Shown: one piece after another, positions 1 through 20,300 of the stretch
Layout of the letters: every line of letters starts with the position of its first letter
Numbering within the stretch: the stretch's first letter is position 1
Assembly: GCA_977020255.1 (NCBI GenBank)
Contig: CDROCS010000004.1
Coordinates: forward strand, 62,001 to 126,000
Reading direction: 5' to 3'
Length of the DNA: 64,000 nucleotides
Source of the DNA: Obrimoposthia wandeli
Lineage: Eukaryota
Program-made: the position numbers and the translations under genes
The notes under the pieces: generated by a model
Told to the model about the DNA's origin: nothing
The model's database searches: none
Seen by the model: the letters and a program-made list of their open reading frames with translations, nothing else

Positions 1-3000
1 ATTTTTGGTAACAACTGTTTTCTTAAATTAACGTTTTTACATTCCACAAAGAATGAATCGGTATCACCGGCAACTATATTAATTGAACAATTGAATAAAT
101 TACGATATATTTGTAAATCATGATACTGAAGAGTATACATTCGTAATTTGCTAAGGTCTAGTACAGCTTGGCCTATATAATTTGGTCGATCGAGACAAAT
201 AAAATCTTTTCTTAATAAAACAGCTATTAAATTATCATGAATTTCAATTGTTCGTTGAAACATAGGTTTGCTAGTATATGTAATTAATTTTGTAGAACTA
301 GTGCAGATGCGAAGATTCAATCGTTTCTTAACATTTTCAACGGTCTTTCCATACAAACTAACATTTTTAAGTTTATAAAAATCTTTGTCACATTTATTCG
401 TTGCTTGTGATCTCATTTCTGAATTATATTCTATATATTCTGCGAATATCTTAGCCTGAGAGAATTTTATTGCTCGATGAATAATTGTTACCACTGCTCC
501 TAAACTAACATACATCTGCAATAGTCTCCAATGAATAACATAATGACTTTTTGGCGAATGCGTCATTAAAAGTTTTTCAACTTTTTTACCAGGTGGACAT
601 TTCTTTTCTGGAGCTATAGGAAGATCATCTAAAAAGTCATGAAGGTTTTCTGGTATTACCAAGTCTACTTCCATAAAATAACCATATTCAATATGTTTCA
701 TGTTCACATTTTTCATTTCATGCAATATTTCGTTTAATTTTATATCATCAAGAATCCATTCAAAATCTCCTTTTGGTAAAGGTTGATCAAGAGCCCATCC
801 ATATAAATTATTAACATCTATATATAAAAGACTTGTTTCTTCATCAGCGACTACATGATGCTTATTGACAAATGTCATTCCTCCTCGTATACCCGAAGAA
901 ATCATGTTGTACATTTCAGGATCCTGCATCAGTTCAACCTTATGTTTTAACATTTTTAGAGCACTTGCCCAACTCAACCCAGGAATGCTAAAAAGTTAAG
1001 TGGTTCTAAACCATCTTCACTGAGAGCTTTTCTTCTGAATGTTTGAAATACGTCAGCTAATAAATATACGTCAGTCTTTAAGTAAACTAACATATAATCC
1101 AACATATTTCTACAATTGGTTATTTTCCAAACATCTTGTGCTTTTTGATATTCAGTGTCTGTGATTTTATCATTCCATTTTACTGGTAAACTTAACTTAT
1201 TCTGGAGGACATTTAATGATGTAGCAAAATCATATGGGAATATTCCTTTGCCATCAATAAGTTTAGATTGAAAAACTGATCTTGTTAACCGAATAGTTGG
1301 TAATTTACCGGCTAAATTTTCTAAAGATGATTGCAAAAATTGCAAAGAATCTATAAATCTCAGAGTTATTTGACCTAATCTTACAATCATGGCTTGAAAC
1401 TTTTCCGTTGATTGTGGTATAATATTTATATCCCAGTCAGTAAATTTATTCAATGCATGTTTTAAAATATGATGTAAATCATAACCTCTGAGATTATGAA
1501 ACACAATAGGTAAAGTTGGACGAAGTTTTCTTGATAAATTACATTCATTGCATGCAGGACCTAGATACTTGCCAGTAAAGTGATCATGATCTTTAACATA
1601 TTTTTCAGATGATTCGCGACATAAATAACATTCATCGGCATTGCTAAATGTATGAATCTCTGCATTTGTTAAGGGTATCATTACGTTTTTAAGAGCATCT
1701 AAATATCATGGCAAAACCTTTTCTTTAGCCAAGTTCTCTATTGACTGAAGAAATTTAACTATGCAGTCATCACCAACATTATATTGATACTGGGTTTCAA
1801 TTTCATCTGTACTCATAAATAACATACCAGATGCGACAGGCATATGCTTTTGATGATAACTCTCATCTGGTACTAATACAGATTCAAAATCAGCGTAAAC
1901 GACATATTTCGGTGATATTGTTTTTGACCAATCGTTGAATTTAACGTACTTATTCTTAGGCATAGTATACATTGTAGTGCTTTCTTGATTATAGTCACAT
2001 AAAACTTTATGCTTTTCTAATGACAAATCGGTTTTGAAACCATGTAAACACTTTTCACACCATTTTCTGCTAATTCTAGTCGTTCCAGTTCGAATATTTA
2101 ATAGCCGGTTAAGACAAGTTATTCCTATATAATGAAACCGTTCCTTGGATTCTAGTAACAATAAATTAACTATAGTTCCTTCCTTTATTTTTGATTTGTA
2201 TGCAATATCAATATAAGGATTCTTGATAACATCAGTTTTTGATTCTTTTTACTTATCTCGTTGAATATGAATACATTTATTATTATACCAGGATTTTGCA
2301 TTTCAAATTTTGATATATTTGATATTTTCATAGGCATGTCTTCGGAATTATATACAAAATCATTTAAAAATCTTTCATATTGGCTTGGTCTATTTCTATG
2401 TACTTCTATTTCATTATATTTAAGTATTGACAATATTGCATAAATAAAGCAAAGATTATCAGAGTTTTGAATATTGACGACTGCTTTAGATTTTGTAAGA
2501 GAATTTGGTGATTTAATATATGAATGACCTGACAATGCACAAATTTGACTATATTTAGTAGCAATAAATGTATATTCAAGTATATTCATCAATTTCCAAC
2601 CACTACCCTTTTCTGAATATTCTTCAACTTTATTTTCCATTGTATCTTCCATTTCTGAAATTATAGCATGTGAAAAAATCATTGCTCGATGCGAAGCATA
2701 CCATTCTTTAGTTTCTCCATCATTCTTTTCAAACCTCATTCTAATGATGTATTGTATCTTTGCTTTTCCCATTAATTGCACTATTCTTTCTAGTTCGTTT
2801 AATAATGAAACTGGAACCTTAAGACTTACAAGATTGAGATGATCTACTTTCATGGATATCATTGAATAACTATTTTCTAACGATGTTTTAGTATGTATAT
2901 TGTCATTTATTTTACGTTTTCGTGACGGAGTAGGAGCTGAAATTACTATGTTTGATGGTACATTAATTATATCAGTTCTTTTGCTTAAAGCCGGTACTTT

Positions 3001-3165: not shown

Positions 3166-3329
3166 TCTTGAGGATTAAAATGTGTATCCGAATAACAAAT
3201 ATTTGAATAAGTTTTACATATACTCATCTGATGATATGATTGATTTGATTGGACTTGAGATATTGGCTGATTTGTATACTGAATAAAAAAAATATATATA
3301 AATACAATAATTTAATTATTTTACTTACA

Positions 3330-3884
3330 ATGTTAACAAATATTAATTATAAAGGAATTTGCTTAGATGATGTATCCAAATTAAAATTTCGAACACGACC
3401 AGAACAATACGTTTATAAAGCCAAAGATTATACAATACTTATTTTTAGAAATAAGAAATGCAGGATTATGGGATGTAAGGTACCTATTAAAAATATTTCT
3501 TACCCTTTAAGAATAAATATACTTGGTATTCAATCAATTACGATATGTGAAAATTTAGATCAAAGTATCAATCTATTTAAATTATGGAATGTATTACGTA
3601 ATGCATGTTCATTTGACCCTGAGGTTTTCCCAGGCTTAAGATTAAATATTTTCAATCCATTGTGTGTAAATATTTTCACATCTGGAAAGGTCGTAATTTT
3701 AGGTCTTAGAAATTTAGATTTTCAAAATCAAGTTAACGATATCATGACATACATTAAAAAAAATTATATAAATACGAAACAATTTCTAATTAATTATGGT
3801 GAAACAAAGATTTCGGATATTCAAGAAGATGGAAGAAGTCTCATCTGGAGGATTCATACAGCGACCGAATATTTTGATGTTTAA
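3330..3884 (+). CDS. TATA-binding-protein-like protein (element 1)
   Basis: FDPEVFPGL...VNIFTSGKVVILG matches the TBP repeat-2 signature YEPELFPGL...LLIFxSGKVVxTG. TILIFRNKKCRIMG matches repeat 1. Likely ATG at 3330. The C-terminal tail may be read-through caused by an 8-A run near 3756-3763. Confidence 0.85.
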   Translation: MLTNINYKGICLDDVSKLKFRTRPEQYVYKAKDYTILIFRNKKCRIMGCKVPIKNISYPLRINILGIQSITICENLDQSINLFKLWNVLRNACSFDPEVFPGLRLNIFNPLCVNIFTSGKVVILGLRNLDFQNQVNDIMTYIKKNYINTKQFLINYGETKISDIQEDGRSLIWRIHTATEYFDV

Positions 3885-3966
3885 TAAATATTTAATAAAA
3901 TGTTGTTATTGTTATAAACATGTACTTATTCTGATATATTTATTTTATATTAATATTTATATATAA
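3796..3966 (+). CDS. Small 56-aa ORF with hydrophobic C-terminus
   Basis: Manual translation MVKQRFRIFKK...HVLILIYLFYINIYI*. Its TAA overlaps the ATPase ATG (TAATG). Positionally equivalent to the 90-aa ORF of element 2. Confidence 0.35.
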   Translation: MVKQRFRIFKKMEEVSSGGFIQRPNILMFNKYLIKCCYCYKHVLILIYLFYINIYI

Positions 3967-4613
3967 TGTTATTAACAAACAATTCGACTTTTCAAGTAGT
4001 AGGACCAAGTGGTAGTGGAAAAACTTTATTTGTTTGTAAATTATTAAATTCAAAAATGTTTAAAAATAAATTTAATAAAATATATTGGCATCAAGGTGGT
4101 GACGGAGAAGCTGGTTTAACAAACCAAGAATTTAATAAAATAAAAAACATTAAGATTATTAACGGTTTTGATGAAAATTGGAAGACAAGACTCGTAAAAG
4201 GTGATGTAATTGTTATTGATGACTTATATCAAGAGGCTAACAAAGAATCTGATTTTAATGATTTATTTACAAAAATTGCAAGACATAGAGAAGTTACTGT
4301 AATTTTTATAACCCAAAATTTATTTCATCAAGGAGGAAATCATCGTACTCGTAATCTTAATGTACATTATTTGATTTTATTCAAAAATCCTAGAGATCAG
4401 ACAGTGATAGATTTTATTGCTCGTCAAGCATTTCCTCATAACAAGAGTTATTTAATTGATGCGTTTCATGATGCTACATCTTTACCTCATGGTTATTTAT
4501 TTTTAAATTTTACTCAATCATGTCCTGATGATTTAAGAATTGTTACTGATATATTTAACCGTAATGGTATTACAGTCTATAAACAAATAAATAATAATAA
4601 TGTTTTAAAATAA
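3966..4613 (+). CDS. A32/FtsK-like genome-packaging ATPase
   Basis: Walker A GPSGSGKT, Walker B VIVIDD, downstream RH..vt.ifitQ and KNPRD motifs; intact 215 aa. Confidence 0.93.
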   Translation: MLLTNNSTFQVVGPSGSGKTLFVCKLLNSKMFKNKFNKIYWHQGGDGEAGLTNQEFNKIKNIKIINGFDENWKTRLVKGDVIVIDDLYQEANKESDFNDLFTKIARHREVTVIFITQNLFHQGGNHRTRNLNVHYLILFKNPRDQTVIDFIARQAFPHNKSYLIDAFHDATSLPHGYLFLNFTQSCPDDLRIVTDIFNRNGITVYKQINNNNVLK

Positions 4614-4614
4614 A

Positions 4615-5028
4615 ATGAATTTTAAAAAGAGTATTCTTAAACATAGTAAAAGGACAGATAAAGATGAAGTTAAAAAATTAATAAATACTGTATTATATGA
4701 TCGTAATAATATTGAATTTTCAAAAAGTTTACCTTATTTTAAAACCTTAATTGACGTACCAAAAACGAATAAAATGAAAATGTTGAAATCATTTCCAATT
4801 TATGTAGTTGATGATTTAATAAAAATTTTAAATAAAATAATTTATGGTAAAATTAAACCTGATGATAATATTTTAAAATATAAAAATTCATTAATAAATT
4901 TAGCAAATTCACATGGTAAAATTAATAAAAGAAACATTATTTATAATCAAAATGGCGGATTCATATTGGCCCTACTGCCCGCTATAGCATCAGTAATAGC
5001 TAGTGTTATATCTTCAAGATGGGGATAG
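4615..5028 (+). CDS. Basic virion core protein precursor (pVII-like)
   Basis: Lys-rich, with a QNGG^F adenain-type cleavage motif followed by a hydrophobic tail (ILALLPAIASVIASVI). Homolog at 24824-25153. Confidence 0.7.
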   Translation: MNFKKSILKHSKRTDKDEVKKLINTVLYDRNNIEFSKSLPYFKTLIDVPKTNKMKMLKSFPIYVVDDLIKILNKIIYGKIKPDDNILKYKNSLINLANSHGKINKRNIIYNQNGGFILALLPAIASVIASVISSRWG

Positions 5029-5189: not shown

Positions 5190-6215
5190 ATGGAAAAGAT
5201 TTGGAACAATCCAGAAGATCCAGACGGTTATACAGGGTTAGAAAAATTGACAAAAAGAGTCAAACAATCAAAAACAAACACACAAAAATGGTTAAGAAAT
5301 GAATTATCATATAGTCTGAATAAACCTTTAAGACGTAAATTCCCTACTAGATCATATAAAACTAATGGTATTAATTCGTTATGGCAGATGGATTTAATGG
5401 AAATGATTCCTTATTCTTCAGTAAATAATGGATTCAAGTATATTTTAACTTGTATTGATGTATTTAGTCGTTTTGCAAGGACAGTTGGTGTTAAATCAAA
5501 ATCAGGTATTGATTTATTACATGCAATAGAATCTTTAATTGTTGATGATGTACCAGTAAATATCCAAACCGATGAAGGTAAAGAATTTTTTAATTCACAT
5601 GTTAAGAAATTATTTAAAACTGAAAATATCAATCATTATTCAGTATATTCTCAATATAAAGCTGCAGTAGTTGAAAGATTTAATAGAACGTTAAGAGAAC
5701 GGTTAAAGAAATATTTTACTAAACAAGGTAATAAGAAATGGGTGAATGTATTACCAAAAATTATTTATGCTTATAATAATTCTAAACATAGAGGTTTAGA
5801 TGGTTTAAAACCTGTAGATGTAAATAATAAAAATGAATTTGATATTTTGTTGAAACAAAATCTAAAAGAAAAGAAAGTTAAATCTAAATATAAAATTGAT
5901 GATTATGTTCGAATATCAAAAATAAGTACAAGTCCATTTATTAAAAATTTTAATCAAAATTGGAGTGATGAGGTTTTTCAAATTCATGATATTAATTATA
6001 AACAAAATCCAATAATGTATATTTTAAAAGATATTGATAACGTCATCATCAAAGGAAAATTTTATAAACAAGAGTTACAATTAATTGATAAACCTAAACT
6101 ATATCGAATACAAGAAATTTTAGAAACTAAAGGTCGTGGTAAGAATAAACAATATTACGTAAAGTGGCACGGATACTCTGAACCTTCTTGGATATTTGCT
6201 TCTCAAATTGAATAA
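5190..6215 (+). CDS. Retroviral-like (RVE/DDE) integrase with C-terminal chromodomain
   Basis: WQMDL, IQTDEGKEF and VERFNRTL supply the D-D-E triad; the C-terminus YRIQEIL...YYVKWHGY...SW is chromodomain-like; intact 341 aa. Confidence 0.95.
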   Translation: MEKIWNNPEDPDGYTGLEKLTKRVKQSKTNTQKWLRNELSYSLNKPLRRKFPTRSYKTNGINSLWQMDLMEMIPYSSVNNGFKYILTCIDVFSRFARTVGVKSKSGIDLLHAIESLIVDDVPVNIQTDEGKEFFNSHVKKLFKTENINHYSVYSQYKAAVVERFNRTLRERLKKYFTKQGNKKWVNVLPKIIYAYNNSKHRGLDGLKPVDVNNKNEFDILLKQNLKEKKVKSKYKIDDYVRISKISTSPFIKNFNQNWSDEVFQIHDINYKQNPIMYILKDIDNVIIKGKFYKQELQLIDKPKLYRIQEILETKGRGKNKQYYVKWHGYSEPSWIFASQIE

Positions 6216-7228
6216 TGTCAAAATATATTATTTTACCTAGTAATAGTTGTCCAAGTACTCAACCTAACAATACAGCCAATCAATTTACTGTAGATTGGGA
6301 AAACTCTCTAAATTTAGATGGTGAATGGGAGGTTGCCTTGACTGAATTAGTATTTAATTATACTCCTTTAACAATACAAACTAATTCAAAAATACTTTAT
6401 AAAACGGAAAAGATAGAAATGAAAACTTTCGATGTATCTTTTGCAATTTTAAATGGATTAATTTTTAATAATTTAAATACTGTTTTCAATTTCAAAATTA
6501 CAAAGGATCAAAAATTAGAAATAAGTACAATTAACAGTATTCATCGAATGTTGTTAAAATTCGAAACTTTAGAAGAATCAAAAATTATAGGTTTTAATGA
6601 AATACAAAAAATTTCTAGTCATGTTATAACAAGTGATGAAATTGTTGACATAAATAAAAATATTCATGCTAAAATGAGAATTACAATTTAATCTTTAGCT
6701 GAATATGAATACGAAATAAAATTTAATCAAAATTATTTGATACAAGATAGTTCTTCATTATGTAATATTATAGCCAGTAAATGTAATGAAATTTTTAAAA
6801 GCTGTAATATAGATTCAAACGGATTATTTGATATTTTAATAAAGAAAAATGTAAAATCAGTTTTATTTGACGAAAAACTTGCATCTTTATTAGGTTTAAA
6901 TAATGTTTTCTTTGAGAAACGAATTAAAGGTTTTCAAAAACCAACACTTTCTAGCTCATATAATCAAATGTATATTTATACTAGTTTAACAGATTCTGTC
7001 TTAGTAGGATCTGATTATGTTCCACTGTTAAAGTCTATTTGGTTAAAATCATTAAAATATCGATATGGAGATGTAGTAAATGTTAAAATTGATAATCCAA
7101 TGTACTTGAAAATGAGAGATTCAAGTATTAATAGAATCGAGGTAAATATACGTGATGATTCTGGTAATTTAATTCCATTTTCATATGGAGCAAAAACTAG
7201 TTTAACTCTTCATTTACGTAAAGTATAA
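6215..7228 (+). pseudogene. Minor capsid (penton-like) protein, one in-frame stop
   Basis: N-terminus LPSNS...PNNTANQF...L.G.WEVAL.E and C-terminus YIYTS...LVG...PLL...IEV.IRD..G...F.....LHLR. ORFs 6215-6691 and 6737-7228 are in the same frame, separated by TAA at 6689-6691. Confidence 0.88.
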
Positions 7229-7271: not shown

Positions 7272-7675
7272 ATGAATACATCAATTATAAAATTTTATAG
7301 CAAAAGTCAACAGGGCGGTGAACTTCCCTATTTCATTGGTAAACAATATGGATCTGGTTGGTATCAAACTATTTCTAGATTAGCTATTCCATTTATTAAA
7401 AAAGTTGGTTTATCAGCAGCTACAAGTGCTGCAAATGTAATTGGTGAAACGGTAGGAACTGCGTTAACAAACCCAAAACAATAATTTCATCTCTCAAAGA
7501 AAATACAATCAAAGAAGTCAAAACTTTGATTCCAAAATTAAAAAATAATGCTGTTGAGAGTTTAAATAAAGTCGCAAATTGTGTTGAACAAAATGGAAAG
7601 GGTCTTAAACGTAAAAGAAATAATTTAAATAGTATAAACAAACGTCTTAAAGGTACTATTTTCCAAAATGACTAG
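7272..7675 (+). pseudogene. Conserved small Polinton virion protein (QxGG / QYGSG motifs, amphipathic helix), frameshifted
   Basis: [18 protein letters not shown]... A frameshift at an A run near 7476 continues as TIISSLKEN...KRLKGTIFQND*, collinear with the intact homolog at 23341-23718 (ends GTIFAK). Confidence 0.75.
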
Positions 7676-8888
7676 TATAAAATCTGAATTGTGTATTTTC
7701 GATAGACCACTACCTCAAGTAGTGATTGAAAATTCAAGTTTTGAAGAAATATTTCCAATCAATTCAATTACTGGAAAAAATTTAAATGACATAGAATTTA
7801 ATATTCATGCATCTGAAGAAGATTATCTGGATTTGAATGATACTTTGTTAAATATTAAATTAAAAGTTGTAAATGAAGATGGTACTGATTTAATGAAAGA
7901 TAGCGATGTAACTCCAGAGAATTACATGTTTCAAACTTTGTTTAGAGATGTTATTCTAACACTTAATAATGTAAAGGTTGAAGGAGGAAATGGAACGTAT
8001 ACTCATAAGGCTATATTCGATACTCTTTTGAATTTTAGTAGTGATACCAAGTATACTAACCTTGAATGTTCCGGGTATGATGATGATGCAGAAAATCGTA
8101 AACAATGGATTAGTGAATCTAAAATATTTTCATTGTGTAATTCAATTAGATTAGATTTCTTTGATCAACCAAAATATTTGATTCCAGGGATTAATGTTCA
8201 TTTGAGATTTATGAGAAATCAGCATAATTTTTCGCTCTATTCAGAAACTTCAAAACCAATTATTCAAATTCTAGATGCTAGATTGTATGTTAGAAGAGTA
8301 AAAGTTGATTCTTCAGTAATGATTGGACATCAGTTAGGTTTGCAAAGTCAGAATGCAGTTTACCCAATTAGAAAAACTCAGTTAGTAACATATTCAATAC
8401 CTCAGGGTTCTTTGGAACTTAATAAAGATCAAATATTCGGAGACTATCGTTTACCCAAGTTCATTTTGATTGCTTTCAAAGATACACCTCAGGGTGGTAA
8501 GGAATACAAAGTTAAATCTTCTACGTTCAATACATTTAATGTTTCAACAATATCATTAGCTAGAAATACAGATTATCGAGAAACTTATAATCTAGATAAT
8601 AACAATTTTTCATTAGCATATATGCAGTCAATTATTCGAAATATGAATATTTTAGATAAAAACGTGAATAATGGTATCAGATTTTCTGATTTTAAATCAG
8701 GAAGTTCGATTTTCACTTTCCTATTAGCACCAGATTTTGATATAAACACTACTCAAGTGCCTAAAACTGGTAATTTAAGACTTGAAATTAGATTTAATTC
8801 TCCTTTGACCGTTCCAACAAGTGTTTTGATTTACGGAATATTTGATTCCGAAATTCAGATTACGAAAAATAAAACTGTGATTGTATGA
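7668..8888 (+). CDS. Major capsid protein (double jelly-roll, hexon-like)
   Basis: KSELCIFD.P.PQ...E N-terminus, [26 protein letters not shown] and GNLRLEIRF..PL motifs typical of Polinton MCP; intact 406 aa. Confidence 0.92.
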   Translation: MTSIKSELCIFDRPLPQVVIENSSFEEIFPINSITGKNLNDIEFNIHASEEDYLDLNDTLLNIKLKVVNEDGTDLMKDSDVTPENYMFQTLFRDVILTLNNVKVEGGNGTYTHKAIFDTLLNFSSDTKYTNLECSGYDDDAENRKQWISESKIFSLCNSIRLDFFDQPKYLIPGINVHLRFMRNQHNFSLYSETSKPIIQILDARLYVRRVKVDSSVMIGHQLGLQSQNAVYPIRKTQLVTYSIPQGSLELNKDQIFGDYRLPKFILIAFKDTPQGGKEYKVKSSTFNTFNVSTISLARNTDYRETYNLDNNNFSLAYMQSIIRNMNILDKNVNNGIRFSDFKSGSSIFTFLLAPDFDINTTQVPKTGNLRLEIRFNSPLTVPTSVLIYGIFDSEIQITKNKTVIV

Positions 8889-9261
8889 AGTAAGCTTATT
8901 GTATATTATATTCTTTATTTAAATTAGTACTTTAGAAATTCATAAATCCGGAAAAATATTATTGAATAACAAATTTAATGGAGTATATTCATTGGATAAA
9001 ATTCCATCATTAAAACCCGGAGGTTACATTATCAATACTCATACTTCAAATCTACCAGGCGAACATTGGATAGCAATATTCGTTGACAGATTCGAGATTC
9101 GAGTGTTTGATCCTTTTGGATTCTATTATCCTGCAAAGTTGGTGTCTACACTTGAAAAAGAAAACATTCCAGTCTACTATAATCGAGTTAAATGTCAGAA
9201 TCCATTAACTAAAAACTGCAGACCTCTGAGTCTTTTATCGTTGAAACTTCAACACAAATAA
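8885..9261 (+). CDS. Adenain-like cysteine protease, spliced join(8885-8889,8928-9261)
   Basis: [14 protein letters not shown] (His), FDPFG (Asp), Q.P.T.NC (Gln/Cys). A 38-bp GTAAGC...AATTAG intron supplies the ATG that overlaps the MCP stop (ATGA). Spliced ORF 112 aa. Confidence 0.85.
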
Positions 9262-9312: not shown

Positions 9313-9765
9313 ATGGCTTTTATTGATTTAGAATGTTTTATTGATAATAATGGAGAATATATTCCAAAGGAATTATGTATAATGTATGTGAATGATATGA
9401 CTTGTCCATTTCATTACGTGTTTAAAAATCAAATACCATGGAGTAGTTTATCATTTACAGTTAAAAGAAAAAATCTATATTTGATAAATCATCATCATCA
9501 GTTATCCTGGTTTGAAGGTGAAAGCTCTGATATTCATATTGATGATGTTGAAACAATATTCTATGTTATGGATTCTATTGATGGAAAGAAAATTAATTTA
9601 GTGAAACGAATGTTTCCAAATTTGAGAATTGTGAATTATAATAAAAGTTTCAAAAATTTAAAGAAAATGCCAAAAAATATTCGATGTCCGTTTAGAAAAC
9701 ACGGAAAACATTGTGCTTATTTGAAATGTTTTTCTCTATGTATTGATTATGTAAATTGTATATAA
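9313..9765 (+). CDS. DEDD/DnaQ-like exonuclease-fold protein with C-terminal Cys/His cluster
   Basis: ExoI-like FIDLECF, IPKEL, HHQLSW..G and terminal CPFRKHGKHCAYLKC. Resembles a small ORF family I recognise from invertebrate Polintons; the fold assignment is by eye. Confidence 0.55.
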   Translation: MAFIDLECFIDNNGEYIPKELCIMYVNDMTCPFHYVFKNQIPWSSLSFTVKRKNLYLINHHHQLSWFEGESSDIHIDDVETIFYVMDSIDGKKINLVKRMFPNLRIVNYNKSFKNLKKMPKNIRCPFRKHGKHCAYLKCFSLCIDYVNCI

Positions 9766-9870: not shown

Positions 9871-10025
9871 CTAAATTTTCACATAGAATAGTATGTGTGT
9901 GATTACGTAATACATTCTTAACTGATAAGAGTGAACTTTAGTATAAATTTCACATAAAATATTGTGTGTATGATTACGTCATACATTCTTAACTGATAAG
10001 AGTGAACTTTATCCTAAATTTTCAT
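9871..10025. repeat. About 71-bp tandem duplication in the subterminal region of element 1
   Basis: GATTACGT(A/C)ATACATTCTTAACTGATAAGAGTGAACTTTA occurs at about 9901 and 9972. Confidence 0.9.
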
Positions 10026-10027
10026 TA

Positions 10028-10373
10028 TGGACTAGATCACAAAAAGAAGGGTGGAGACTAAGCCACTTGATCCTTTGAATTAGTAGTTAGCCAAAAAGAA
10101 GGGTGGAGACTAGACCACAAGAGAAGGGTGGAGACTAAGCCACTTGACCCTTTCATAGTGGTATATCATAAAAAGAAGGGTGGAGACTAAGCCACTTGAC
10201 CCTTTCATAGTGGTATATCACAAAAAAAAGAAGGGTGGAGACTAAGCCACTTGACCCTTTCATAGTGATATATCACAAAAAGAAGGGTGGAGACTAAGCC
10301 ACTTGACCCTTTGAATTATGGACGACCATAGATTATAGCCAAAAGAAGGGTGGAGTCTAGATCACTTGACCCC
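10028..10373 (+). repeat. Seven copies of an approximately 30-bp core (period about 50 bp) in the terminal region
   Basis: AGAAGGGTGGAGACTAAGCCACTTGACCC(T) starts near 10041, 10093 (truncated), 10121, 10170, 10225, 10277 and 10341. Confidence 0.92.
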
Positions 10374-10412
10374 CTCACCCTCTCCCTCCCCTCCCCCTCC
10401 CCGCCTCCTCCT

Positions 10413-11307: not shown

Positions 11308-14300
11308 ACGTGCAAGTGGACACAAAAACTTACCCAGAGATCGAGGCGGCCATCGATCGGCAGATAGGGGAACATTCGCTCATCAACCACGATGCCTGGC
11401 GCAAGAAGTTGATTCAGTTGTATGAGACCCAGCGTGTCCGGCACGGTATGATGACGCTGGGTCCATCTGGAGCCGGCAAGACCAAGTGCATCAGCGTCTT
11501 GATGAAAGCCATGACGGACTGTGGCGAGCCGCACAAGGAGATGCGCATGAATCCCAAGGCCATCACTGCACCACAGATGTTCGGTCGACTGGACGTTGCC
11601 ACAAACGACTGGACTGACGGTAAGTGATGGCTATATCATCAAGATTGATTTATGAAACCTTTTACTACTCATTACAGTCAATACCACATTTTAGGTATTT
11701 TCTCGACACTGTGGCGACGTACCCACAAAGGGAAGAAGGGCGACCACATCTGGCTGGTGCTGGACGGTCCTGTGGATGCCATTTGGATTGAGAACCTCAA
11801 CTCTGTATTGGATGACAACAAAACACTGACTCTGGCCAATGGAGATCGAATCACGATGGCACCAAACACAAAGATCATATTCGAGGTGCATAACATTGAC
11901 AATGCCAGTCCAGCGACCGTCTCCCGAAACGGCATGGTCTACATGAGCAGCTCCATTCTTGACTGGCAACCGATATTGAAGAGCTGGCTACTCAAGTACA
12001 CCCAGGGTTCCGTGTCCAGCACCATCTTTGAAACCTTCAATCTGATATTCACCGATACCTATCGATATGTCACTCGCGACCTTTTCCCCAAGATAGAAAC
12101 CCTAGAATGCAACTACATCAGACAGGCCATTGATCTTCTAGAAGGATTGCTACAAGGTTAATGTTCTGTTCTGTTTACTGGACATTTTAGAAATTTAATA
12201 ATTTGTAGCATAAATTCCTAATACCTGAAATTAACATTTGTATTCTTCAGGCATGGATGAGAAGGACATCAAGACTAATCATCTGGAGAAGTTGATTGTA
12301 TTTTCGATCATGTGGTCAGTTGGTGCTCTTCTAGAACTGGAAGATCGTCTGAAGCTACAGGAGTTCTTGCAGCAAAAGAACTGCATACCGCTTCCGAAGC
12401 TGACAAACGACAACACAATATTCGAGTACGTTGTTAACAAAGAAGGCGAATGGGAACATTGGGACAACAGGATCTCTGAGTACAACTATCCGACAGATCA
12501 TATCCCCGAGTATATAAGCATCCTTGTCCCGAATGTCGACAACACGCGGACTGATTTCCTCATCGATACCATCTCAAAGCAAGGAAAAGCAGTACTGTTG
12601 ATCGGTGAACAGGCAAGTGCACACACCATCAAACATGGCAAAGCTCAGTGAACTCTATAAGAATTTCAATAATCTCCTTGTCATTGCAGGGCACAGCCAA
12701 GACAGTGATCGTGAAAGGCTACTGTGGCAAGTACAATCCCGAGGACCACATGTTCAAGTCGTTGAACTTTTCCAGTGCTACAACTCCCAACATGTTCCAG
12801 CGCACTGTGGAGAGCTACGTCGACAAGCGGATGGGCTCCACATTTGGTCCTCCGACTGGTAAGAAGATGACCATATTCCTGGACGACATCAATATGCCCG
12901 TCATCAACGAGTGGGGAGATCAGGTGAGCTACTTACAATCAAAAATAACAAATTTACATTCAAAATGAAATGTTATTGTTCTTATATTGTAAATTACGAT
13001 AATTATTCCTTTAATTGCATTCAGTCAGATTATATATTTGGGAGGATATGTTGACAGAGTTTTTGACTCACATGCAGATCACCAATGAAATCGTGCGTCA
13101 AATGATGGAAATGTCCGGCTTCTACAGTCTCGAGAAACCGGGTGACTTCACTAGCATCGTTGATATCCAGATCATGGGGGCCATGATCCACCCGGGCGGT
13201 GGGCGCAATGACATTCCACAGCGACTAAAGCGCCAGTTCAGCATCTTCAACTGCACTCTGCCCAGCAACACAAGCATTGACAGGATCTTCTCCATTCTGT
13301 GCATCGGATACTTCTGTCCTGAACGCGGTTTCAGTAAGGAGGTTCTGGCCACTGTCAAGATCCTGGTCGGTTGCACTCGCAAGCTCTGGCAGAAGACCAA
13401 GGTAGGTCTCTTCTTTTCTTGAATTGAAATATTGATTGATTGATTGATTGAAATATTGATTGTTTTATTGTTTTATTGAAATATTGATTGATTGATTGGT
13501 TGGTTGGTTGAGAGCGTGCTGTTTTTCTCAAAAAACGAATTTACCAATTTGAAAGTATTGTCATTTTTTAAAAGTTTCAAACTTTAAGTGCTTACCTAGT
13601 TATTAGTGTTTCCAATACCGGTATTTTTAAAACCTTGATCCCGATATTACCGGTGAAAATGCAATATACAAATACAGGTTTAGCAACACAAAATAAAACG
13701 TAATCTGGTACTGAATTTTACCGATATATGTTTTAAATTTTTGATATTTTTCTACATAACTTTCATAAAATTTTAAATATATATGTATCTTTTATGAGAA
13801 ACAACTGGACAATATCAATCTTAATGTGATGAATGCTTTGATAATTTTAATGTATTTAGCTCTCTAAAAACATTATTAAAAATATATATAAATCGAACTA
13901 TTAAATTTGTACATTGATATATTGTTTAATACCTATGTTTCTTAGTGTTGTATAAATTTATGTATTTAAATGTTTTATTTAATATTTATTGACATTTTTA
14001 AATTTGAGAATGAATCTTCTTAATGTTGTCACTTTCTCGTTAAGTAAAGTAAAGAAGTATAAACTCTAAAAAATGATATGGCATTACCTGTTGTTTTATA
14101 AATCTGTTAAAGTTTATCAATGTGAATAGTGACAAACAAGTATATGTCGCCACATACAGGTAAAAATGCTGCCCACACCGGCCAAGTTCCACTACGTGTT
14201 CAACTTGCGCGACCTCAGTCGCATCTGGCAGGGCATGCTTAACTGCACCAGTGACATCGTAAACACCCCTGGCAAGGCTATGTCGCTGTGGAAGCACGAG

Positions 14301-17300
14301 TGCATGCGCGTTATCACGGACCGATTCGTTGAACAGACAGACACCAACTGGTTCGACAAGATGCTCAAGGTCATAGGTAAGTCATCCGATTAGAAAATCG
14401 GACGGATTTTGAGCAGTTTCAGATAGATTAATTTAATTAATATGTGATAACTTTTACAACTAAACATATAATTATGACTTAAATTTGAATCAAATAATGA
14501 TTTATAAAACATTAATATTTAAATATTTTGATAAATTAATTTATTAATGAAATTACAATCAGATATAACGTGAAATATGATCAAAAGGAAATCAGAGGGC
14601 CAACAATTAAGAGAGCTTTAAACCATTTATGTGATTAGTTTAAACTTACCGACGATGATGATGTATATTACTGAGACTAAAACTACCCTGTTCTGGTCGG
14701 TGAGAGCCGGTCCAGGTAAGAGTGAGAATTTAGTCTAACTATATGTCTCGAAATTTTGATCTAGTTTAAGGGTTCTTATAGAGTACCCAAGTAATCATGG
14801 CGGTCTTTGAATTTTTTTGCAAAATTAAATTTTCAATAGCTATCATTATTAATGGATTACAAGAAACCCCTAGTATGTGTACGTGTATGTTAGTATTAGT
14901 ATAATTTCGTACGAATGCATGTGGAATTGCATGTGCTTCGGAAATTAATATTTTAAAATATTCTGGATCAATTTGTTGAAAGATCAGCAAGAAAAAGAAA
15001 ACAGGTTTAAGTAGCTATATATATATATATGTACAGTATCGGTATTTCAGTATTATTTTGTTTCATGCTAATTAAATTAATTATTTGTTACTACTTTAAT
15101 TACTTAATTTGTAATGTTAATGTAATAAATTGTACGAAATAAAAGCGTGCAATTCGCTGTGAAATGTCGAGGGGCCAAAAGAAACTCGAAGCTTAGGAGT
15201 CTTGTCATATGCTAGTGCTGCAATTTCGTACGCGTCTCAACCTACAAGTCAAGTTTTGGAACAAGTGATCAGGGAGACACTTTTTATTTGCCAACATGAA
15301 TTTTTGTGATACGAGAAATTTCCAGTAAAATGACGAATTGCGTGATCTGATCGAATTTAATTTTGTTGTCTTAACAAAATTGTATATTAGCAAAGCAAAT
15401 TTAGCAAACTGTTGGGCAAATCGTCACTACATTCAACCTGGTAGATATTTAGATATATAGTCATTTCGATTCAAGAATTAAATGACAAACGTCCAGAATA
15501 TGCCAGAGATGACAGAGTGATTGTTCATTGTAAATTGCCAAACATAACCAAGAAATATTGTATCTTCTTCGATAGGATGTGCTATTATCCAGATAATGTT
15601 CCCATTAATTCCTTTTTTCTATCAATGTACTCATTCGTTTCAGATCAACACTTCAATTTTTTATGATGGCTTTAAGGTTGAACAGCTTTAAAATAACGGC
15701 TTTTTGTATCTGAAAATCAATTAATTTTTTAAAAATGAGAAAATATCTGATCCAGAGATGAAAAATATTTGTTGAATAAAATTTTGTTGATTTATTTTAT
15801 TATTAATATTATAGTTTATTTTAAAACAGCAGAAACTTATTCTAGTATCAAAATTATTTCAATGATATTTTAAAAGTTCAAAAGTAGACTCAGGGATATT
15901 TCTAATTATTCTAATATAAAGAATTTAAACAGGAAAGTAAAATTGAATTAATTGAATATATTAAAGAATAAAAAATAAATAAACATATTTTTGAAAAACA
16001 GTGTTGACCATGTTAATTATATACCTTTTATAAATTAATTGATTACTTTATTTTATATTAGTTAATTTATCGACAGTTGATGACATTTTCAAAATTCATT
16101 GCAGGCGAAGAGGACTGTGGTGAGGCTGCAGTAGCTGAAATGGAGGAGGAGCCCTACTTCATAGATTTCTTGCGCGACGCTCCAGAGCCCACTGGAGAAG
16201 AGGCAGAAGATGCAGACATGGAGGCGCCTAAGATTTATGAGCCAATTGAGTCCTACGAGCAGTTGGCTGAGCGACTGATGGTGATGATGTCACTCTACAA
16301 CGAGTCCATTCGCGGTAGCAAGCTGGACTTGGTGTTCTTCAAGGACGCGATGACGCACTTGGTGAAGATAAGCCGCGTCATTCGGACAACGAAGGGTCAC
16401 TCTCTGCTGGTGGGCGTAGGCGGCTCCGGCAAGCAGTCACTCACACGCTTGGCTTCCTTCATTGCCGGCTACGAGACCTTCCAGATTGTGCTCACCAGGT
16501 AAGCTCACCGTAACAGTCACCGAGCTAAGAAGAGCTTCCTTGAAGAAGATGATTTATGTAGCAAGAGTAATTTTGATTTCATTAATTGTTTTGATGATGT
16601 TTCGATGGATTTTAGCTTTAAAATTGTTAACATTTAGCTTCCTATGCAAATTAGCAATCGAACTGTTAACTGAGGAAAATATCAAAAGTGTCTCAAGATT
16701 ATTCGGTTAAATAATTCACGTCATATTTTGAGCCCATATTCACATTTAATGACATTTTCAAAACTAAAATGCACTTAACCTCGGATTCAGTACACCATAA
16801 AATAGAAAACACCATAACAGGGCTACATAACAGTTACAATATAAAAATTAAAGTATTTGAAATTAAAACAAAATAACATTCATGATAAAAATATTTTTTA
16901 ATAAAATATAAATAAAAATGTATAATATCATTCGCACATATTTAGTTGTGACAAATACACAACTACAAGATTACATATCAATATCCAATCAAACTATTTA
17001 TCTTCCAATAATAAACGTTCTCAACCCAGTAATCAATCGAAAATTAAACACCTTTGACAAATGTCGAATGTATTTGTCATTCAAATCATATTTACCACTG
17101 CTCGCAACTACGTCATTCGTACATTTTAGTTATGGTAATGGTAAAGAGTGAGATTGGATATTGATATGTCATGGTGTAGCTGTGCGGTTTCCATAACTAA
17201 AAACGAATGAGTGATATTACAAATTTATATTTCTATTCTATTAAAAATATCGTATAATGCATGTGATTTGTGTCTTTTTTGTAAATTTATTGGGAGAGCA

Positions 17301-20300
17301 CGCTTTGAGATATTATTGTTCTTATTCGTAATACTTTCAAATTTATTTTGTAACAGTTAGGTATTCCTGTTTTTGCCAAACAAAGAGATGGTGTTTTCAA
17401 TTTTTCTCAAGTAAACTGAATATCGGGTATTTATTGTTTGGGTTTGAATGTGTAAATGAATTAAAAAATAAATGTTACTCCTTACAATCTTTATATTGTA
17501 TGGGAGGATATTTTTTATTTGAAAGTATTAGTTTGTTTTCCTTTGAAACTTTGTGTGGAACTTAAGATTATTCGAAATTAATTTAACACCGTTATTTATC
17601 ATTGCAGTAGCAGTGACGGGTAAAGGATTTTATTTCATCACCTGTTTCACAGTTCACATATTTTCATGATTTTTTATTAAAATTATCTACATAAAAATCT
17701 CTCTTCACAATCAAAATTTTGGTGAAAAATGTTTAACATATTAATATTATTGGGACGCTGTAAAAGGAAATTGCCGTTTGTATACATTACGCCGTCCACG
17801 GAGCCTAGAAAGAGAAGAAGGCGAAATATATATGTTATATAGTATTATCATTATTTAAATGTTAGTTGGTGGAAAAGTTTATTTATTAAGGGAGAGCACA
17901 GGCAGATTTAAAATGACATTTGTATTTCATTGACTTCCAATTAGTATTTTAAACTGGATTAATACACTTAGAAATTAATTATTGTTGTTAATTTTATCAT
18001 TAGTAAGTAGGTGGATGTGTCCGGTCTAATCCACACCCCCTCCACCCCCCTGTCCTTTAAAACCGAGCATGTGTGTGGAGTGAAATTTCGTGTAGGTGTG
18101 TGGAGTGAAATTTCGTATATGTGTGTCTCCATCCCGCCCAAAGGGGGAAGGAAGGGGGGGGGGGTACCCCCCACCATATTTGTTAAACTTTTACCATGAA
18201 TCTCAAAAGTGGTTAGAGAAGACCACGAGAATCCATATTGACCCCGGCGACTTTTCGCAGACGAGATTTCAAATATTACTACTATTTTTAAGAAAGATTT
18301 TAGATTAATAAATTACTACATGTTAAATATCTATGTCAGTTTTAGAATTTAGAGGAGAAAAATCGGTCAGATCTATATAATTTAGAGGAGCAAAAACAAA
18401 ATACGAGACAAAATTATTTTTCAAAATATTTATTAAACATAAAACAACATATTGGCTTCACTCAAAGTCCAGAGAGGCTGCATTTTCCCGTCATTAGCAA
18501 AATATCCATTCAGACGTATTGAGATATTCCATAGTTCTTCATCTAGAATTGGAGCAATCAAATATCCCAGATCATCTTTAAAATCCAGACTGGGATCAGT
18601 TTCAAGCTCGAAACAATTTCCTTCATATACATAATCAGAAATGTAAAAGCCCAAAATATTTTTCAGTTGATCAAAATCAGTTGTTGTTAAAATTTCGATG
18701 AGATATTTTTTCTCCACTTTTGATATTTTCACAGGATTCATAATTCGTATAATTTGATGCCTCTTTAATATATTACATAGTTTTCCTTTTGAAATTCTTT
18801 CTGGATAATAAAAATTTGCTACACATCTCATATCCATTCTAAAATAAGGAAACTGATTAAAAACAATGTTTATAAAAAAATACACATAAGATACAAATAA
18901 GATACAAATAAAACTGATTATTAAATGAAAGAAACATAGTAAAACCGATTACAATTTATTACACACAAAAGTTAAAACATAGAAATATGAGCACGTTCAA
19001 TTTTCCACATAGGCAACTTTGTCCCCATTTCATCTTTCTTGTAACCATAAAGTCGAATTGTTAGAGTCCATTGCTTCTTTTTCGGAAACGCATCAATATC
19101 AACATATCTTCCATAGTCATCTAGAAATGCTTCATCGGCTCCTCGGATATAAAATTCGTTCTTATTGAAAGTAAAATTTGGAACTGCCTTTTCTATTTTC
19201 TGTTTAAGATATTGAAAATCAGGTTTTTGAATACCTGATAGATAGTAGCTGAACTTTCTTCTTTCAATTGTCACAGGATTTACTAAAGCAATCAGTTTAG
19301 CCTTCTTCAAGAATCTGACTTTGTATTTGAAATATTGTTTCACTTCTTCATACATATCCTTATCCGATTCTTCAAACATTTCTTCGTCATCGCTTAATAC
19401 CCGTTGGCTATCGTCCATCGTTGATAATTGTCTTTGATATGAATGCATTTACTGTGATTTGTCCTCCAATGGCGCATTCTTTTATACTAATTTCTAACAA
19501 AGACAAGAATCTCATTGGTTAATATAACTAAAGCATTGAATTTGATTGGACTAAATCTATATTAAAAATCAAAATTTATTGGAAGAAATATATCATCCAA
19601 TTATAATAGGTTTGCAAGATAATTACAAGAAACGTGCAATAAAAAGCAGGTTCAGACATATATAAAGAAGATTTTACAGAATACAATTTCAGTCTAATGA
19701 AACTCGTAAATATAAATTATAAAGGTAGAACAGAAGATGATGTTTCGTACTTACCATTCAATGAATGGAAGCCGAGACAATATGTAGAAAAGTTTGACAA
19801 TTTCACAGTTGTTATGTTTCCTACAGGTTAGTTTTTTATTTTATTTTCATATTGAATTCTTTAGGAAATTGTCGTGTTATGGGATGCAAAATACCAATGC
19901 TTGGGTTCAATTTACCATTTGGAATTCAAATCACTGCAATACAATCAATCACGATTTCGGCTAATCTCGGGAAACAGATAAATATTTTTAAAACTGCAGA
20001 GAAAATGAAAGAAGAATGCATGTTTGAACCAGAAATTTTTCCTGCTCTCAGTTATTTGAAGTTTAAACCGCTATGTGTAAATATATTTTCCAGTGGTAAA
20101 GTTATGATATTGGGATTGAAAAATTTTGATTATCCAGACATAGTTGATTTGATTTTAGAAAATATATCTTATTACATCTTGTTATCTTTTCTATAAACAA
20201 ACCCGTTTAAACTTATTGTTTTGAATGAATAATACTATAAATAGAGACAATGAAGTGGATCGGCTTGCCGATGAAATTTTTTCTGGAAAAATTAGGGTTA

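What the first reader, a model, noticed from the sequence alone, without database searches (positions are those of the whole stretch)
3330..3884. Polinton/adintovirus lineage encoding its own TATA-binding-protein-like factor
Seen: both elements carry a gene with the TBP saddle signature (FDPEVFPGL...NIFTSGKVV; FEPEIFPAL...NIFSSGKVM). It sits just upstream of the packaging ATPase block in each, inside the element boundaries, with AT-rich element-like codon usage. The two copies are clearly orthologous yet diverged, and both frames are open in otherwise decaying elements. Known: TBP homologs occur in large DNA viruses such as NCLDVs and WSSV, while the standard Polinton set (pPolB, INT, ATPase, MCP, mCP, PRO) does not include TBP, and no RNA polymerase gene is visible in either element. 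Inference: this lineage may supply its own promoter-recognition factor to redirect host Pol II to viral promoters, or to inhibit host pre-initiation complexes. I do not recall this being described for Polintons, but could not search to confirm novelty.
Basis: partly seen in the sequence, partly recalled or inferred. Interest (0 to 1): 0.92.

Follow-up and report, generated by a model that had tools for sequence, protein, structure and literature searches.

The report
Polinton-encoded miniature TATA-binding protein
A virus-like mobile element sitting in an animal dynein gene carries its own shrunken TATA-binding protein, and most of the element's other genes have one fixed TATA-like box (TATAAACA) in front of them, which suggests the element steers the host's RNA polymerase to its own genes.

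Summary
The gene is real. Window 3330-3884 (+) encodes a 184-aa protein that passes Pfam TBP (E 7e-12). A confident AlphaFold model of it matches only TBPs in the PDB. It is not a standard TBP. The C-terminal repeat is complete, but the N-terminal lobe is four strands with both helices missing ('mini-TBP', about 150 aa in relatives). It is a core gene of one Polinton/Maverick clade (pPolB, rve integrase, A32-type ATPase, double-jelly-roll capsid, adenain): 7 of 7 capsid-selected contigs carry it. The second element is a palindromic, badly decayed copy. It holds two mini-TBP copies, each with one frameshift, so 'both frames open' is wrong. New here: the 8-mer TATAAACA lies about 32-54 nt upstream of the start codons of most element genes (40 of 80 upstream regions against 3.4 expected; strand-specific). 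It was never found in front of the mini-TBP gene (0/22) or pPolB, and the mini-TBP genes tend to have ordinary TATA boxes instead. The best reading is a virus-encoded promoter-recognition factor driving a two-tier programme, like the herpesvirus TBP-like/TATT system. A 'TBP' label already appears in a figure legend of Starrett et al. 2021, but I found no analysis of it. All evidence is computational.

The parts
3330..3884 (+). Mini-TBP gene of element 1, intact, 184 aa. Residues 1-53 form a helix-less four-strand N lobe and residues 62-147 a complete TBP repeat. Residues 148-184 are a tail not shared by relatives.
3293..3304 (+). Ordinary TATA-type box (TATATATAAATA) 26-37 nt upstream of the mini-TBP start codon. 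There is no TATAAAC box here.
3913..3920 (+). TATAAACA box 53 nt upstream of the ATPase start codon
4578..4585 (+). TATAAACA box 37 nt upstream of the orf137 start codon
5092..5099 (+). TATAAACA box 98 nt upstream of the integrase start codon
7224..7231 (+). TATAAACA box 48 nt upstream of the orf70 start codon
7633..7640 (+). TATAAACA box 35 nt upstream of the major capsid protein start codon
9269..9276 (+). TATAAACA box 44 nt upstream of the orf150 start codon. Three further boxes on the same strand lie at 5997-6004, 6063-6070 and 8741-8748.
1..2161 (-). Protein-primed DNA polymerase B gene of element 1, with an endonuclease VII domain at its N-terminus. It runs off the window start. It is broken in the visible part (1 frame change, 1 stop). 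It has no TATAAAC box.
2185..2862 (-). orf225, function unknown, divergent from the mini-TBP gene
3966..4613 (+). A32/FtsK-type packaging ATPase, intact
4615..5028 (+). Conserved orf137, function unknown, intact
5190..6215 (+). rve integrase with a weak C-terminal chromodomain hit, intact
6215..7228 (+). Penton-sized gene (single ORF of about 346 aa in relatives), broken by 1 stop
7668..8888 (+). Double-jelly-roll major capsid protein, intact, 406 aa
8962..9261 (+). Adenain-like protease, shortened (covers 103 of 126 reference residues)
9313..9765 (+). Conserved orf150, intact. It is the last gene of element 1 before the GC content rises.
18005..29215 (.). Element 2, a rearranged palindromic remnant. 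It has 3.6-kb inverted arms that are 99.3% identical. Only the last ~165 codons of pPolB remain, and the ATPase, integrase, capsid and protease genes are broken.
19703..20196 (+). Mini-TBP copy in the left arm of element 2, broken (1 frameshift)
27031..27524 (-). Mini-TBP copy in the right arm of element 2, broken (1 frameshift)
11310..46227 (+). Exons of the host DNAH5-type axonemal dynein heavy chain gene (for example 11310-13422, 16077-16502, 36690-37211, 38911-39339, 45670-46227). Element 2 lies in one of its introns. Element 1 lies upstream of the AAA1 exon, so it is presumably in an intron too.

Best explanation
Window 3330-3884 encodes a compact TBP-fold protein ('mini-TBP') that is a core gene of one clade of Polinton/Maverick virus-like elements. 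Copies of that clade sit here in and next to introns of an animal DNAH5-type gene.

Shown:
- The C-terminal lobe is a complete TBP repeat. It keeps the acidic stirrup motif and both phenylalanines of the DNA-kinking pair.
- The N-terminal lobe is a four-strand remnant of the first repeat, without helices H1 and H2.
- An invariant TATAAACA box sits on the coding strand about 32-54 nt upstream of the start codons of the packaging, capsid and accessory genes and some integrase genes.
- The mini-TBP gene and pPolB never have this box. Mini-TBP genes often have an ordinary TATAWAWR box plus a TCAT[AT] element.

Inferred:
- The mini-TBP (and probably pPolB) is transcribed first, from a host-type promoter.
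- The protein then binds the TATAAACA boxes. Its canonical C lobe would sit on the TATA half and its remodelled N lobe on the AACA half.
- Through its conserved stirrup it recruits host TFIIB and RNA polymerase II, switching on the virion and packaging module.
- Loss of the N-lobe helices, which are docking surfaces for host TBP regulators, would make it independent of TFIID-type control.
For: Fold:
- Pfam TBP E 7.3e-12; PDB sequence hits are TBPs only.
- AlphaFold pLDDT 86.5, above 94 in the core.
- The top 44 Foldseek PDB hits are all TBP, covering both lobes (171 columns, TM 0.61, E 1.6e-9).
- hhalign against canonical TBPs gives probability 99.9 and E 2e-31. The match is colinear from strands S3/S4 of repeat 1 through repeat 2, with a ~13-residue gap where helix H2 of repeat 1 lies.

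Conservation:
- 56 cluster representatives at E<=1e-30.
- Window residues N6, M47, S69, L82, F100, N114 and F116 are identical in all 58 aligned sequences. P97, E98, F39, R45 and G119 are identical in at least 95%.
- pN 0.30-0.43 against a saturated pS of 0.65-0.92.

Core gene:
- Neighbours are always Polinton genes.
- 7 of 7 capsid-bearing contigs carry it, including four picked by capsid alone.

Promoter box:
- TATAAAC was the top enriched 7-mer, present in 40 of 80 upstream regions against 3.4 expected.
- The window holds 29 TATAAACA against 9.5 expected, and all 9 in element 1 are on the gene strand.
- Strand counts in related loci are 11:0, 10:0, 9:1 and 8:1.
- It replicated in independent loci.
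- Mini-TBP genes have it 0/22 times against 51/147 for other ORFs, p 2.8e-4. TATAWAWR is found in 10/22 against 24/147, p 0.0035. TCAT[AT] is found in 13/22 against 30/147, p 3e-4.
- The box persists in front of orthologous genes although synonymous sites are saturated.

Precedent: beta- and gamma-herpesviruses have no polymerase of their own and use a TBP-like protein on a variant TATT box at late promoters (PMC4893493). These proteins appear among the weak structural hits.
Against: - There is no expression, binding or transcription-start data. Everything is sequence and predicted structure.
- TATAAACA contains a perfect TATAAA core, so host TBP may read it unaided.
- The box-to-ATG distance (mode 32-38 nt) would leave leaders of only a few nucleotides if initiation is about 30 nt downstream, which is unusual for animal mRNAs.
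- Only about a third to a half of ORFs have the exact box, and several integrase genes lack it.
- The N lobe keeps only one of the two kinking phenylalanines (F39). The position that is Asn in canonical C lobes is an invariant Ser. DNA binding of the canonical kind is therefore not assured.
- The window copy has Asp where 97% of relatives have Glu in the stirrup, and it carries an unshared, low-confidence tail. It sits in an element whose pPolB is already broken, so this particular copy may be inactive.
- The only TBP-less distant relative examined (L102) lacks the box. That is one locus.
Confidence: 0.5

Rival explanations
1. Host TBP reads the element's TATAAACA boxes. The mini-TBP acts as a decoy or competitor instead. 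It would occupy host TATA boxes or soak up TFIIB/BRF-type partners without supporting full complex assembly, and so damp host transcription or host restriction.
For: TATAAACA keeps the canonical TATAAA core. The mini-TBP lacks the N-lobe helices that full TBPs use for several partner contacts, so it could form dead-end complexes. The stirrup motif is conserved.
Against: This reading does not explain why C at position 7 is invariant and A at positions 8-9 is strongly preferred (41/49 and 30/49) across loci whose neutral sites are saturated. It also does not explain why the mini-TBP and pPolB genes are the ones that avoid the box.
Confidence: 0.2
2. The protein is a non-transcriptional DNA-bending factor. 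It would act in replication (for example at the element termini) or in genome condensation and packaging, using the TBP fold only as a DNA-binding module.
For: The gene lies directly upstream of the packaging ATPase in the window and in L001-L003 and L100. TBP-fold domains are known outside transcription (my own knowledge, not tested here).
Against: The gene's position is not fixed. It is divergent from the ATPase in L007/L008 and lies after the protease in L004, L005, L099 and L101. Unlike virion and packaging genes, it lacks the TATAAACA box. The TFIIB-facing stirrup motif is among the best conserved columns.
Confidence: 0.12
3. It is a passenger: a fragment of a host TBP gene picked up by chance, with no function for the element.
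For: The element-2 copies are broken, and element 1 is itself partly decayed.
Against: It is present in 7 of 7 capsid-bearing contigs of the clade. Dozens of diverged intact copies exist, with invariant columns and pN well below pS. The best cellular matches are only about 22-30% identical.
Confidence: 0.02

Closest known systems
Cellular and archaeal TATA-binding protein (Pfam PF00352)
   Same: Same fold over both lobes (Foldseek TM about 0.6, 171 columns). Complete C-terminal repeat with the acidic stirrup motif and both phenylalanines.
   Different: About 150 aa instead of a core of about 180 aa. The N lobe has four strands and no helices H1/H2. Only one Pfam repeat is detected. An invariant Ser stands where canonical C lobes have Asn. 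It is encoded by a mobile virus-like element.
Beta/gamma-herpesvirus TBP-like late factor (BcRF1 / ORF24 / UL87) with TATT late promoters
   Same: A nuclear DNA virus without its own RNA polymerase encodes a TBP-fold protein. A variant TATA box marks the late (virion) genes, while early genes have ordinary boxes (PMC4893493). Here the two-class box pattern is shown.
   Different: The herpesvirus proteins are several-fold larger (577-1005 aa among the hits). The review puts their identity to TBP at about 10% and has them working within a six-protein complex. They give only weak structural matches here (E about 1e-3, TM about 0.3). The box differs (TATT against TATAAACA). No partner proteins were identified in the Polinton.
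TBP homologues of giant viruses (Nucleocytoviricota)
   Same: These are the best viral structural matches (E 1.5e-7 to 1e-4). They are virus-encoded TBP-fold proteins.
   Different: By my own knowledge, not tested here, those viruses carry their own RNA polymerase, and the small matches (186-197 aa) look like full two-repeat proteins. Identity is 10-21%. IMG/VR holds only such distant relatives and none of the mini-TBP family.
'TBP' gene labelled in MELD viruses by Starrett et al. 2021 (Virus Evol, PMC8502044, Fig. 5)
   Same: A TBP-like gene in a midsize linear dsDNA virus with adintovirus-like PolB. The same legend lists TRAF, and TRAF/MATH genes accompany the mini-TBP in L003 and L097.
   Different: It is only a label in a figure legend, for non-animal datasets. 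There is no architecture, family or promoter analysis.

Membership tests
TBP superfamily (PF00352) | Significant match to the TBP repeat profile above the curated cut-off | tested here: met
   45.4 bits against 22.9, E 7.3e-12, residues 67-130. All 17 first relatives carry PF00352.
TBP superfamily (PF00352) | Two complete tandem repeats (each strands plus two helices) forming the saddle | tested here: not met
   Only one Pfam repeat is found. In the model the N lobe has strands 2-11, 26-30, 35-39 and 43-49 and no helix. hhalign shows the H2 segment of repeat 1 deleted. The overall two-lobed fold still aligns to full TBPs.
TBP superfamily (PF00352) | Pair of phenylalanines in each lobe that kink the DNA | tested here: inconclusive
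   In the C lobe, F100 and F116 are invariant. In the N lobe only F39 is conserved (98%), and the other position is variable. Which canonical residues these correspond to rests on the tool alignments.
TBP superfamily (PF00352) | Acidic C-terminal stirrup that contacts TFIIB (role known from published TBP-TFIIB structures; my own knowledge) | tested here: met
   The motif columns are 95-97% conserved in 58 relatives and align to the canonical motif. The window copy has Asp for the first Glu. Binding itself was not tested.
TBP superfamily (PF00352) | Binds TATA-type DNA | not testable with these tools
   There is only the indirect link to the TATAAACA box.
Polinton / Maverick elements | Protein-primed family B DNA polymerase | tested here: met
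   PF03175 E 5.9e-15 on 974-1681(-). 49-54% identity to the pPolB of L006. The gene is broken and cut by the window start.
Polinton / Maverick elements | Retroviral-type (rve) integrase | tested here: met
   PF00665 E 9.8e-10, 39.1 bits against 32.6, on 5190-6215.
Polinton / Maverick elements | Double-jelly-roll major capsid protein | tested here: met
   Model pLDDT 87.6. Foldseek matches PBCV-1 Vp54 at 1.9e-16 and also mavirus and Sputnik capsid proteins.
Polinton / Maverick elements | A32/FtsK-type packaging ATPase and adenain-like protease | tested here: met
   Pox_A32 26.3 bits against 22.8. Peptidase_C5 is weak in the window (E 0.003) but on record for the orthologue in L005.
Polinton / Maverick elements | Terminal inverted repeats and target-site duplication | tested here: inconclusive
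   The left end of element 1 is outside the window. Element 2 is a 3.6-kb-armed palindrome, not a normal TIR pair.
Adintoviruses (Starrett et al. 2021) | [quoted passage not shown] | not tested
   No adintovirus comparator came back as a named hit, and none was fetched. Only the animal host (DNAH5 exons) fits.
Herpesvirus TBP-like late factors | Homology to BcRF1/ORF24/UL87 and a set of partner late factors | tested here: not met
   Only weak structural hits (E about 1e-3, TM about 0.3). No partner genes were recognised. The likeness is one of working principle, not membership.

The most novel reading that the evidence does not exclude
A clade of Polintons resident in animal genomes runs its own two-tier transcription programme without a polymerase. 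A minimal TBP is made from a host-type promoter. It then redirects host RNA polymerase II to a clade-specific TATAAACA box on the capsid and packaging genes. Its helix-less N lobe both changes the box preference and frees it from the host's TBP regulators. This would be the smallest known two-lobed TBP and the first dedicated transcription switch described for Polintons.
Probability: 0.4. Interest if true: 0.85.

Novelty: new variant of a known kind. Interest (0 to 1): 0.7.

Why it matters
Polintons/Mavericks are usually described by their replication, integration and capsid genes. How they time their expression in the nucleus is essentially unknown. A conserved element-encoded TBP paired with a clade-wide, strand-specific promoter box would give a concrete, testable model. 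That model would be an early/late switch built on the same principle as herpesvirus late transcription, but with a protein of only about 150 residues. The truncated architecture also bears on TBP biology, because it shows which parts of the saddle can be lost while the fold stays under selection. In practice, the mini-TBP plus the TATAAACA box is a sharp marker for recognising and annotating this Polinton clade. The clade is abundant in metagenomes but absent from IMG/VR.

Tried and rejected
- Exact-sequence look-ups of the window's mini-TBP and capsid protein found no record. The host species stays unidentified. A literature search for the accessions of related contigs also found nothing.
- Rfam found nothing in the window.
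- IMG/VR scans with the mini-TBP, capsid and ATPase alignments returned no member of the clade.
Synonymous sites are saturated for every pair, and the two element-2 arms differ too little.
- The supplement of Starrett et al. is not held, so I could not find out which virus carries their 'TBP'.
- Searches for Polinton or Maverick with TBP, TATA-box or core promoter found nothing beyond that legend.
- I considered and rejected a single-repeat TBP that must dimerise. The model and hhalign show a second, reduced lobe in the same chain.
- I considered and rejected TATAAACA as a 3'-end signal of the upstream gene. It keeps a tight distance to the downstream ATG, and it also occurs where no gene lies upstream on that strand (L003 TRAF genes, L007 divergent genes).

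Full report
**1. What is at the coordinates**

- The ORF 3249-3884 has its first ATG at 3330 and gives a 184-aa protein containing the first quoted motif.
- Pfam scores it as TBP (PF00352) at E 7.3e-12, 45.4 bits against a cut-off of 22.9. Only one repeat is found, at residues 67-130.
- A sequence search of the PDB returns TBPs almost exclusively: 35 of the 36 hits, the exception being a non-significant one at E 0.41. The best is an archaeal TBP, 1mp9_A, at 4.6e-14. Query residues 64-143 match both repeats of those proteins.
- tblastn inside the window finds two more copies, at 19703-20208 (+) and 27019-27524 (-), about 44% identical. The second quoted motif is there.

**2. Architecture**

- Eighteen relatives were aligned (A1) and used for AlphaFold2. 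Mean pLDDT is 86.5, pTM is 0.75, and blocks 1-140 mostly score above 94.
- The model has an N lobe of four strands (2-11, 26-30, 35-39, 43-49) with no helix.
- The C lobe has the full strand and helix set of a TBP repeat (strands 62-75, 93-95, 103-105, 112-115, 120-126; helices 82-92 and 132-157).
- Residues 166-184 have pLDDT below 50. Residues 148-184 are present in fewer than 35% of relatives.
- Foldseek against the PDB gives 44 hits at E<=0.001, and all are TBPs. They align over about 171 columns, so both lobes are covered, with TM about 0.6.
- Against viral models the best hits are giant-virus TBPs (E 1.5e-7 and weaker). Much weaker hits include herpesvirus BcRF1/UL87/U58 and poxvirus early transcription factor subunits.
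- A profile-profile comparison with 13 canonical two-repeat TBPs (A2; all PF00352 with two stretches) gives probability 99.9 and E 2e-31.
  - Window residues 30-147 are colinear with the last strands of repeat 1 followed by all of repeat 2.
  - A gap of about 13 residues lies where helix H2 of repeat 1 sits.
- The protein is therefore a single-chain, two-lobed TBP in which the first repeat has lost both helices.

**3. Family and conservation**

- A word-indexed search found 17 relatives of 105-275 aa at 42-52% identity. All are from metagenomes, and JGI names one of them 'TATA-box binding protein'.
- An exhaustive profile search of 1.84 billion cluster representatives found 3253 hits at E<=0.001. 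These include ordinary TBPs, which match in two stretches.
- Of those, 56 hits at E<=1e-30 match the whole profile in one stretch. Their typical length is 145-175 aa.
- In 58 aligned members:
  - window residues N6, M47, S69, L82, F100, N114 and F116 are identical in all;
  - N4, Y7, P24, F39, R45, G48, P97, E98, P110, C112, G119, K120 and G125 are identical in at least 95%;
  - at window position 96, 97% share one residue, while the window has Asp.
- Codon comparisons give pN 0.30-0.43 and pS 0.65-0.92. Synonymous sites are saturated, and where a ratio can be computed it is 0.13-0.32. This fits long-term purifying selection, but it says nothing about the window copies since they integrated.

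**4. The elements and the host**

*Element 1* runs from the window start to about 9.8 kb at 24-27% GC. Its genes are:

| Gene | Position | Evidence |
|---|---|---|
| pPolB with N-terminal endonuclease VII domain | minus strand, 1-2161 | |
| orf225 | minus strand, 2185-2862 | |
| mini-TBP | 3330-3884 | |
| A32-type ATPase | 3966-4613 | |
| orf137 | 4615-5028 | |
| rve integrase with weak chromodomain | 5190-6215 | |
| penton-sized gene | 6215-7228 | |
| small ORF (orf70) | 7272-7484 | |
| capsid protein | 7668-8888 | |
| adenain-like protease | 8962-9261 | |
| orf150 | 9313-9765 | |

- The capsid protein was modelled at pLDDT 87.6. It matches PBCV-1 Vp54 (1.9e-16) and the mavirus and Sputnik capsid proteins, so it has a double jelly roll.
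- Break counts against intact relatives:
  - pPolB has 1 frame change and 1 stop in the visible part;
  - the penton-sized gene has 1 stop;
  - the small ORF and the protease are shortened;
  - the mini-TBP, ATPase, orf137, integrase, capsid protein and orf150 are intact.

*Element 2* (18005-29215) is a palindrome with 3.63-kb arms that are 99.3% identical.
- Only the last ~165 codons of pPolB remain.
- Each mini-TBP copy has 1 frameshift.
- The ATPase, integrase, capsid protein and protease genes are broken.

*The host gene.*
- The surrounding DNA carries exons of an axonemal dynein heavy chain on the + strand.
- These exons score about twice as high to human DNAH5 as to ciliate or algal chains: 173 against 87 bits, and 145 against 89 bits. 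The host is therefore an animal or a very close relative of animals.
- Element 2 lies between exons, so it is intronic. Element 1 lies upstream of the AAA1 exon, so it is presumably intronic too.

**5. Is the mini-TBP a regular gene of this lineage?**

- Contigs that encode relatives always show Polinton neighbours that are 50-75% identical to those of element 1.
- Four more contigs were chosen through the capsid protein alone. One is from an NCBI assembly (GCA_031406105.1). All four carry the gene. Together with the earlier ones, 7 of 7 capsid-bearing contigs have it.
- Its position varies:
  - upstream of the ATPase on the same strand (window, L001-L003, L100);
  - divergent from the ATPase (L007, L008);
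  - after the protease (L004, L005, L099, L101).
- IMG/VR holds no member of the clade. JGI metagenomes hold at least 327 relatives.

**6. The promoter box**

- I took 80 nt upstream of 80 called genes in element 1 and five related loci and ranked the 7-mers. The top ones were TATAAAC and ATAAACA. They were present in 40 and 43 regions against 3.4 and 3.7 expected.
- The window has 29 TATAAACA against 9.5 expected, and 0 of 100 shuffles reach 29. Twenty of the 29 lie in the two elements. All nine in element 1 are on the gene strand.
- The box starts mostly 32-54 nt before the ATG of the ATPase, orf137, capsid protein, orf150 and accessory TRAF/LRR genes, among others.
- Strand counts in other loci are 11:0, 10:0, 9:1 and 8:1.
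- In an independent set of JGI loci, 25 of 99 ORFs have it 21-43 nt upstream (one more at 67), and none of 15 mini-TBP genes do.
- Pooled results:

| Upstream feature | Mini-TBP genes | Other ORFs >=80 aa | Fisher p |
|---|---|---|---|
| TATAAAC | 0/22 | 51/147 | 2.8e-4 |
| TATAWAWR | 10/22 | 24/147 | 0.0035 |
| TCAT[AT] within 30 nt of the ATG | 13/22 | 30/147 | 3e-4 |

- After TATAAAC, the next two bases are A in 41/49 and 30/49 instances.
- pPolB genes also lack the box.
- In the window, the mini-TBP gene has a TATATATAAATA box at 3293-3304.
- The box is kept in front of orthologous genes although neutral sites are saturated, so it is under selection.
- The single distant TBP-less relative I could fetch (L102) shows no enrichment or strand bias. 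That is only one locus.

**7. Mechanism**

Shown:
- a conserved TBP-fold core gene;
- a clade-wide, strand-specific, position-fixed box on the packaging and virion genes and some integrase genes;
- absence of that box from the mini-TBP and pPolB genes.

Inferred: the mini-TBP is an early product that recognises the box and recruits host TFIIB and Pol II.

Two points in this inference rest on my own knowledge of published TBP-DNA and TBP-TFIIB structures, not on a test here:
- The C-terminal repeat of TBP sits on the 5' half of the TATA box and the N-terminal repeat on the 3' half. This would place the canonical lobe on TATA and the remodelled lobe on AACA.
- The conserved acidic stirrup is the TFIIB contact.

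The working principle has a published precedent in beta- and gamma-herpesviruses (PMC4893493).

Open problems are the very short leaders implied by the 32-38 nt spacing, and the possibility that host TBP reads the box.

**8. Novelty**

- Full-text searches found no analysis of a Polinton or Maverick TBP.
- The one exception is the legend of Fig. 5 in Starrett et al. [quoted passage not shown] Automatic annotation also recognises the domain.
- What appears new is the truncated architecture, the status as a core gene of a large clade found in an animal genome, and the two-class promoter pattern.

In my working I also reasoned from the bounds of ORF pieces of broken genes. Those places are not repeated in this report or in the notes.
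- In my working I also recalled short motif strings of canonical TBP from memory. All comparisons with canonical TBP rest on the tool alignments.

Noticed in passing
window 18005-21631 and 25596-29215: Element 2 is a palindrome: 3.63-kb inverted arms, 99.3% identical, around a 4-kb centre. This could be a real inverted duplication of a decayed element. It could also be a fold-back artefact of a long-read assembly.
   Followed up: partly
window 974-1681 (-): The N-terminus of the pPolB carries a recombination endonuclease VII domain (PF02945, E 7e-7), where Starrett et al. imply an OTU domain in adintovirus PolB.
   Followed up: no
window 9874-10544: Just past the last gene of element 1 lie a 71-nt tandem pair (9874-10015), four copies of a 52-87-nt unit (10042-10312) and a near-perfect 66-nt hairpin (10410-10544). 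They may be the element's terminal repeats, or they may be host satellite DNA.
   Followed up: no
window 11310-46227 (+): The host gene is a DNAH5-type outer-arm dynein heavy chain with large introns. Both elements sit inside or next to it, and the capsid module of element 1 has the same orientation as the gene.
   Followed up: partly
L003:854-1858 and 5476-6447; L097:3952-4941; L006:1292-3001: Related elements carry TRAF/MATH-domain and leucine-rich-repeat accessory genes. Those in L003 and L006 each have a TATAAACA box; the L097 TRAF gene has none. 'TRAF' is also a label in the same Starrett et al. figure legend that lists 'TBP'.
   Followed up: partly
upstream of mini-TBP genes in L017-L035, L046, L005-L008: Mini-TBP genes often have a TCAT[AT] element within 30 nt of the ATG (13/22 against 30/147). 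It is sometimes preceded by a TATAWAWR box about 25-30 nt further up, which looks like an ordinary TATA-plus-initiator core promoter.
   Followed up: partly
window 3771-3884; window 19852-20196: The intact window copy has a 35-residue C-terminal tail that relatives lack, and Asp where 97% of relatives have Glu in the stirrup. The element-2 copies also differ from the family at two otherwise highly conserved columns.
   Followed up: no
IMG/VR scans: This Polinton clade has well over a hundred capsid relatives (171 at E<=1e-5) in ENA, JGI and Logan assemblies, yet it is absent from IMG/VR. Viral-catalogue-based surveys would therefore miss it.
   Followed up: yes
ENA sample ERZ25039515 (L003, L007, L097, L100): One metagenome sample holds at least four distinct copies of the clade, some of them decayed (in L097 the mini-TBP is reduced to a 56-aa fragment and pPolB is split in two). 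This suggests host-genome DNA of an unidentified AT-rich animal in that sample.
   Followed up: no
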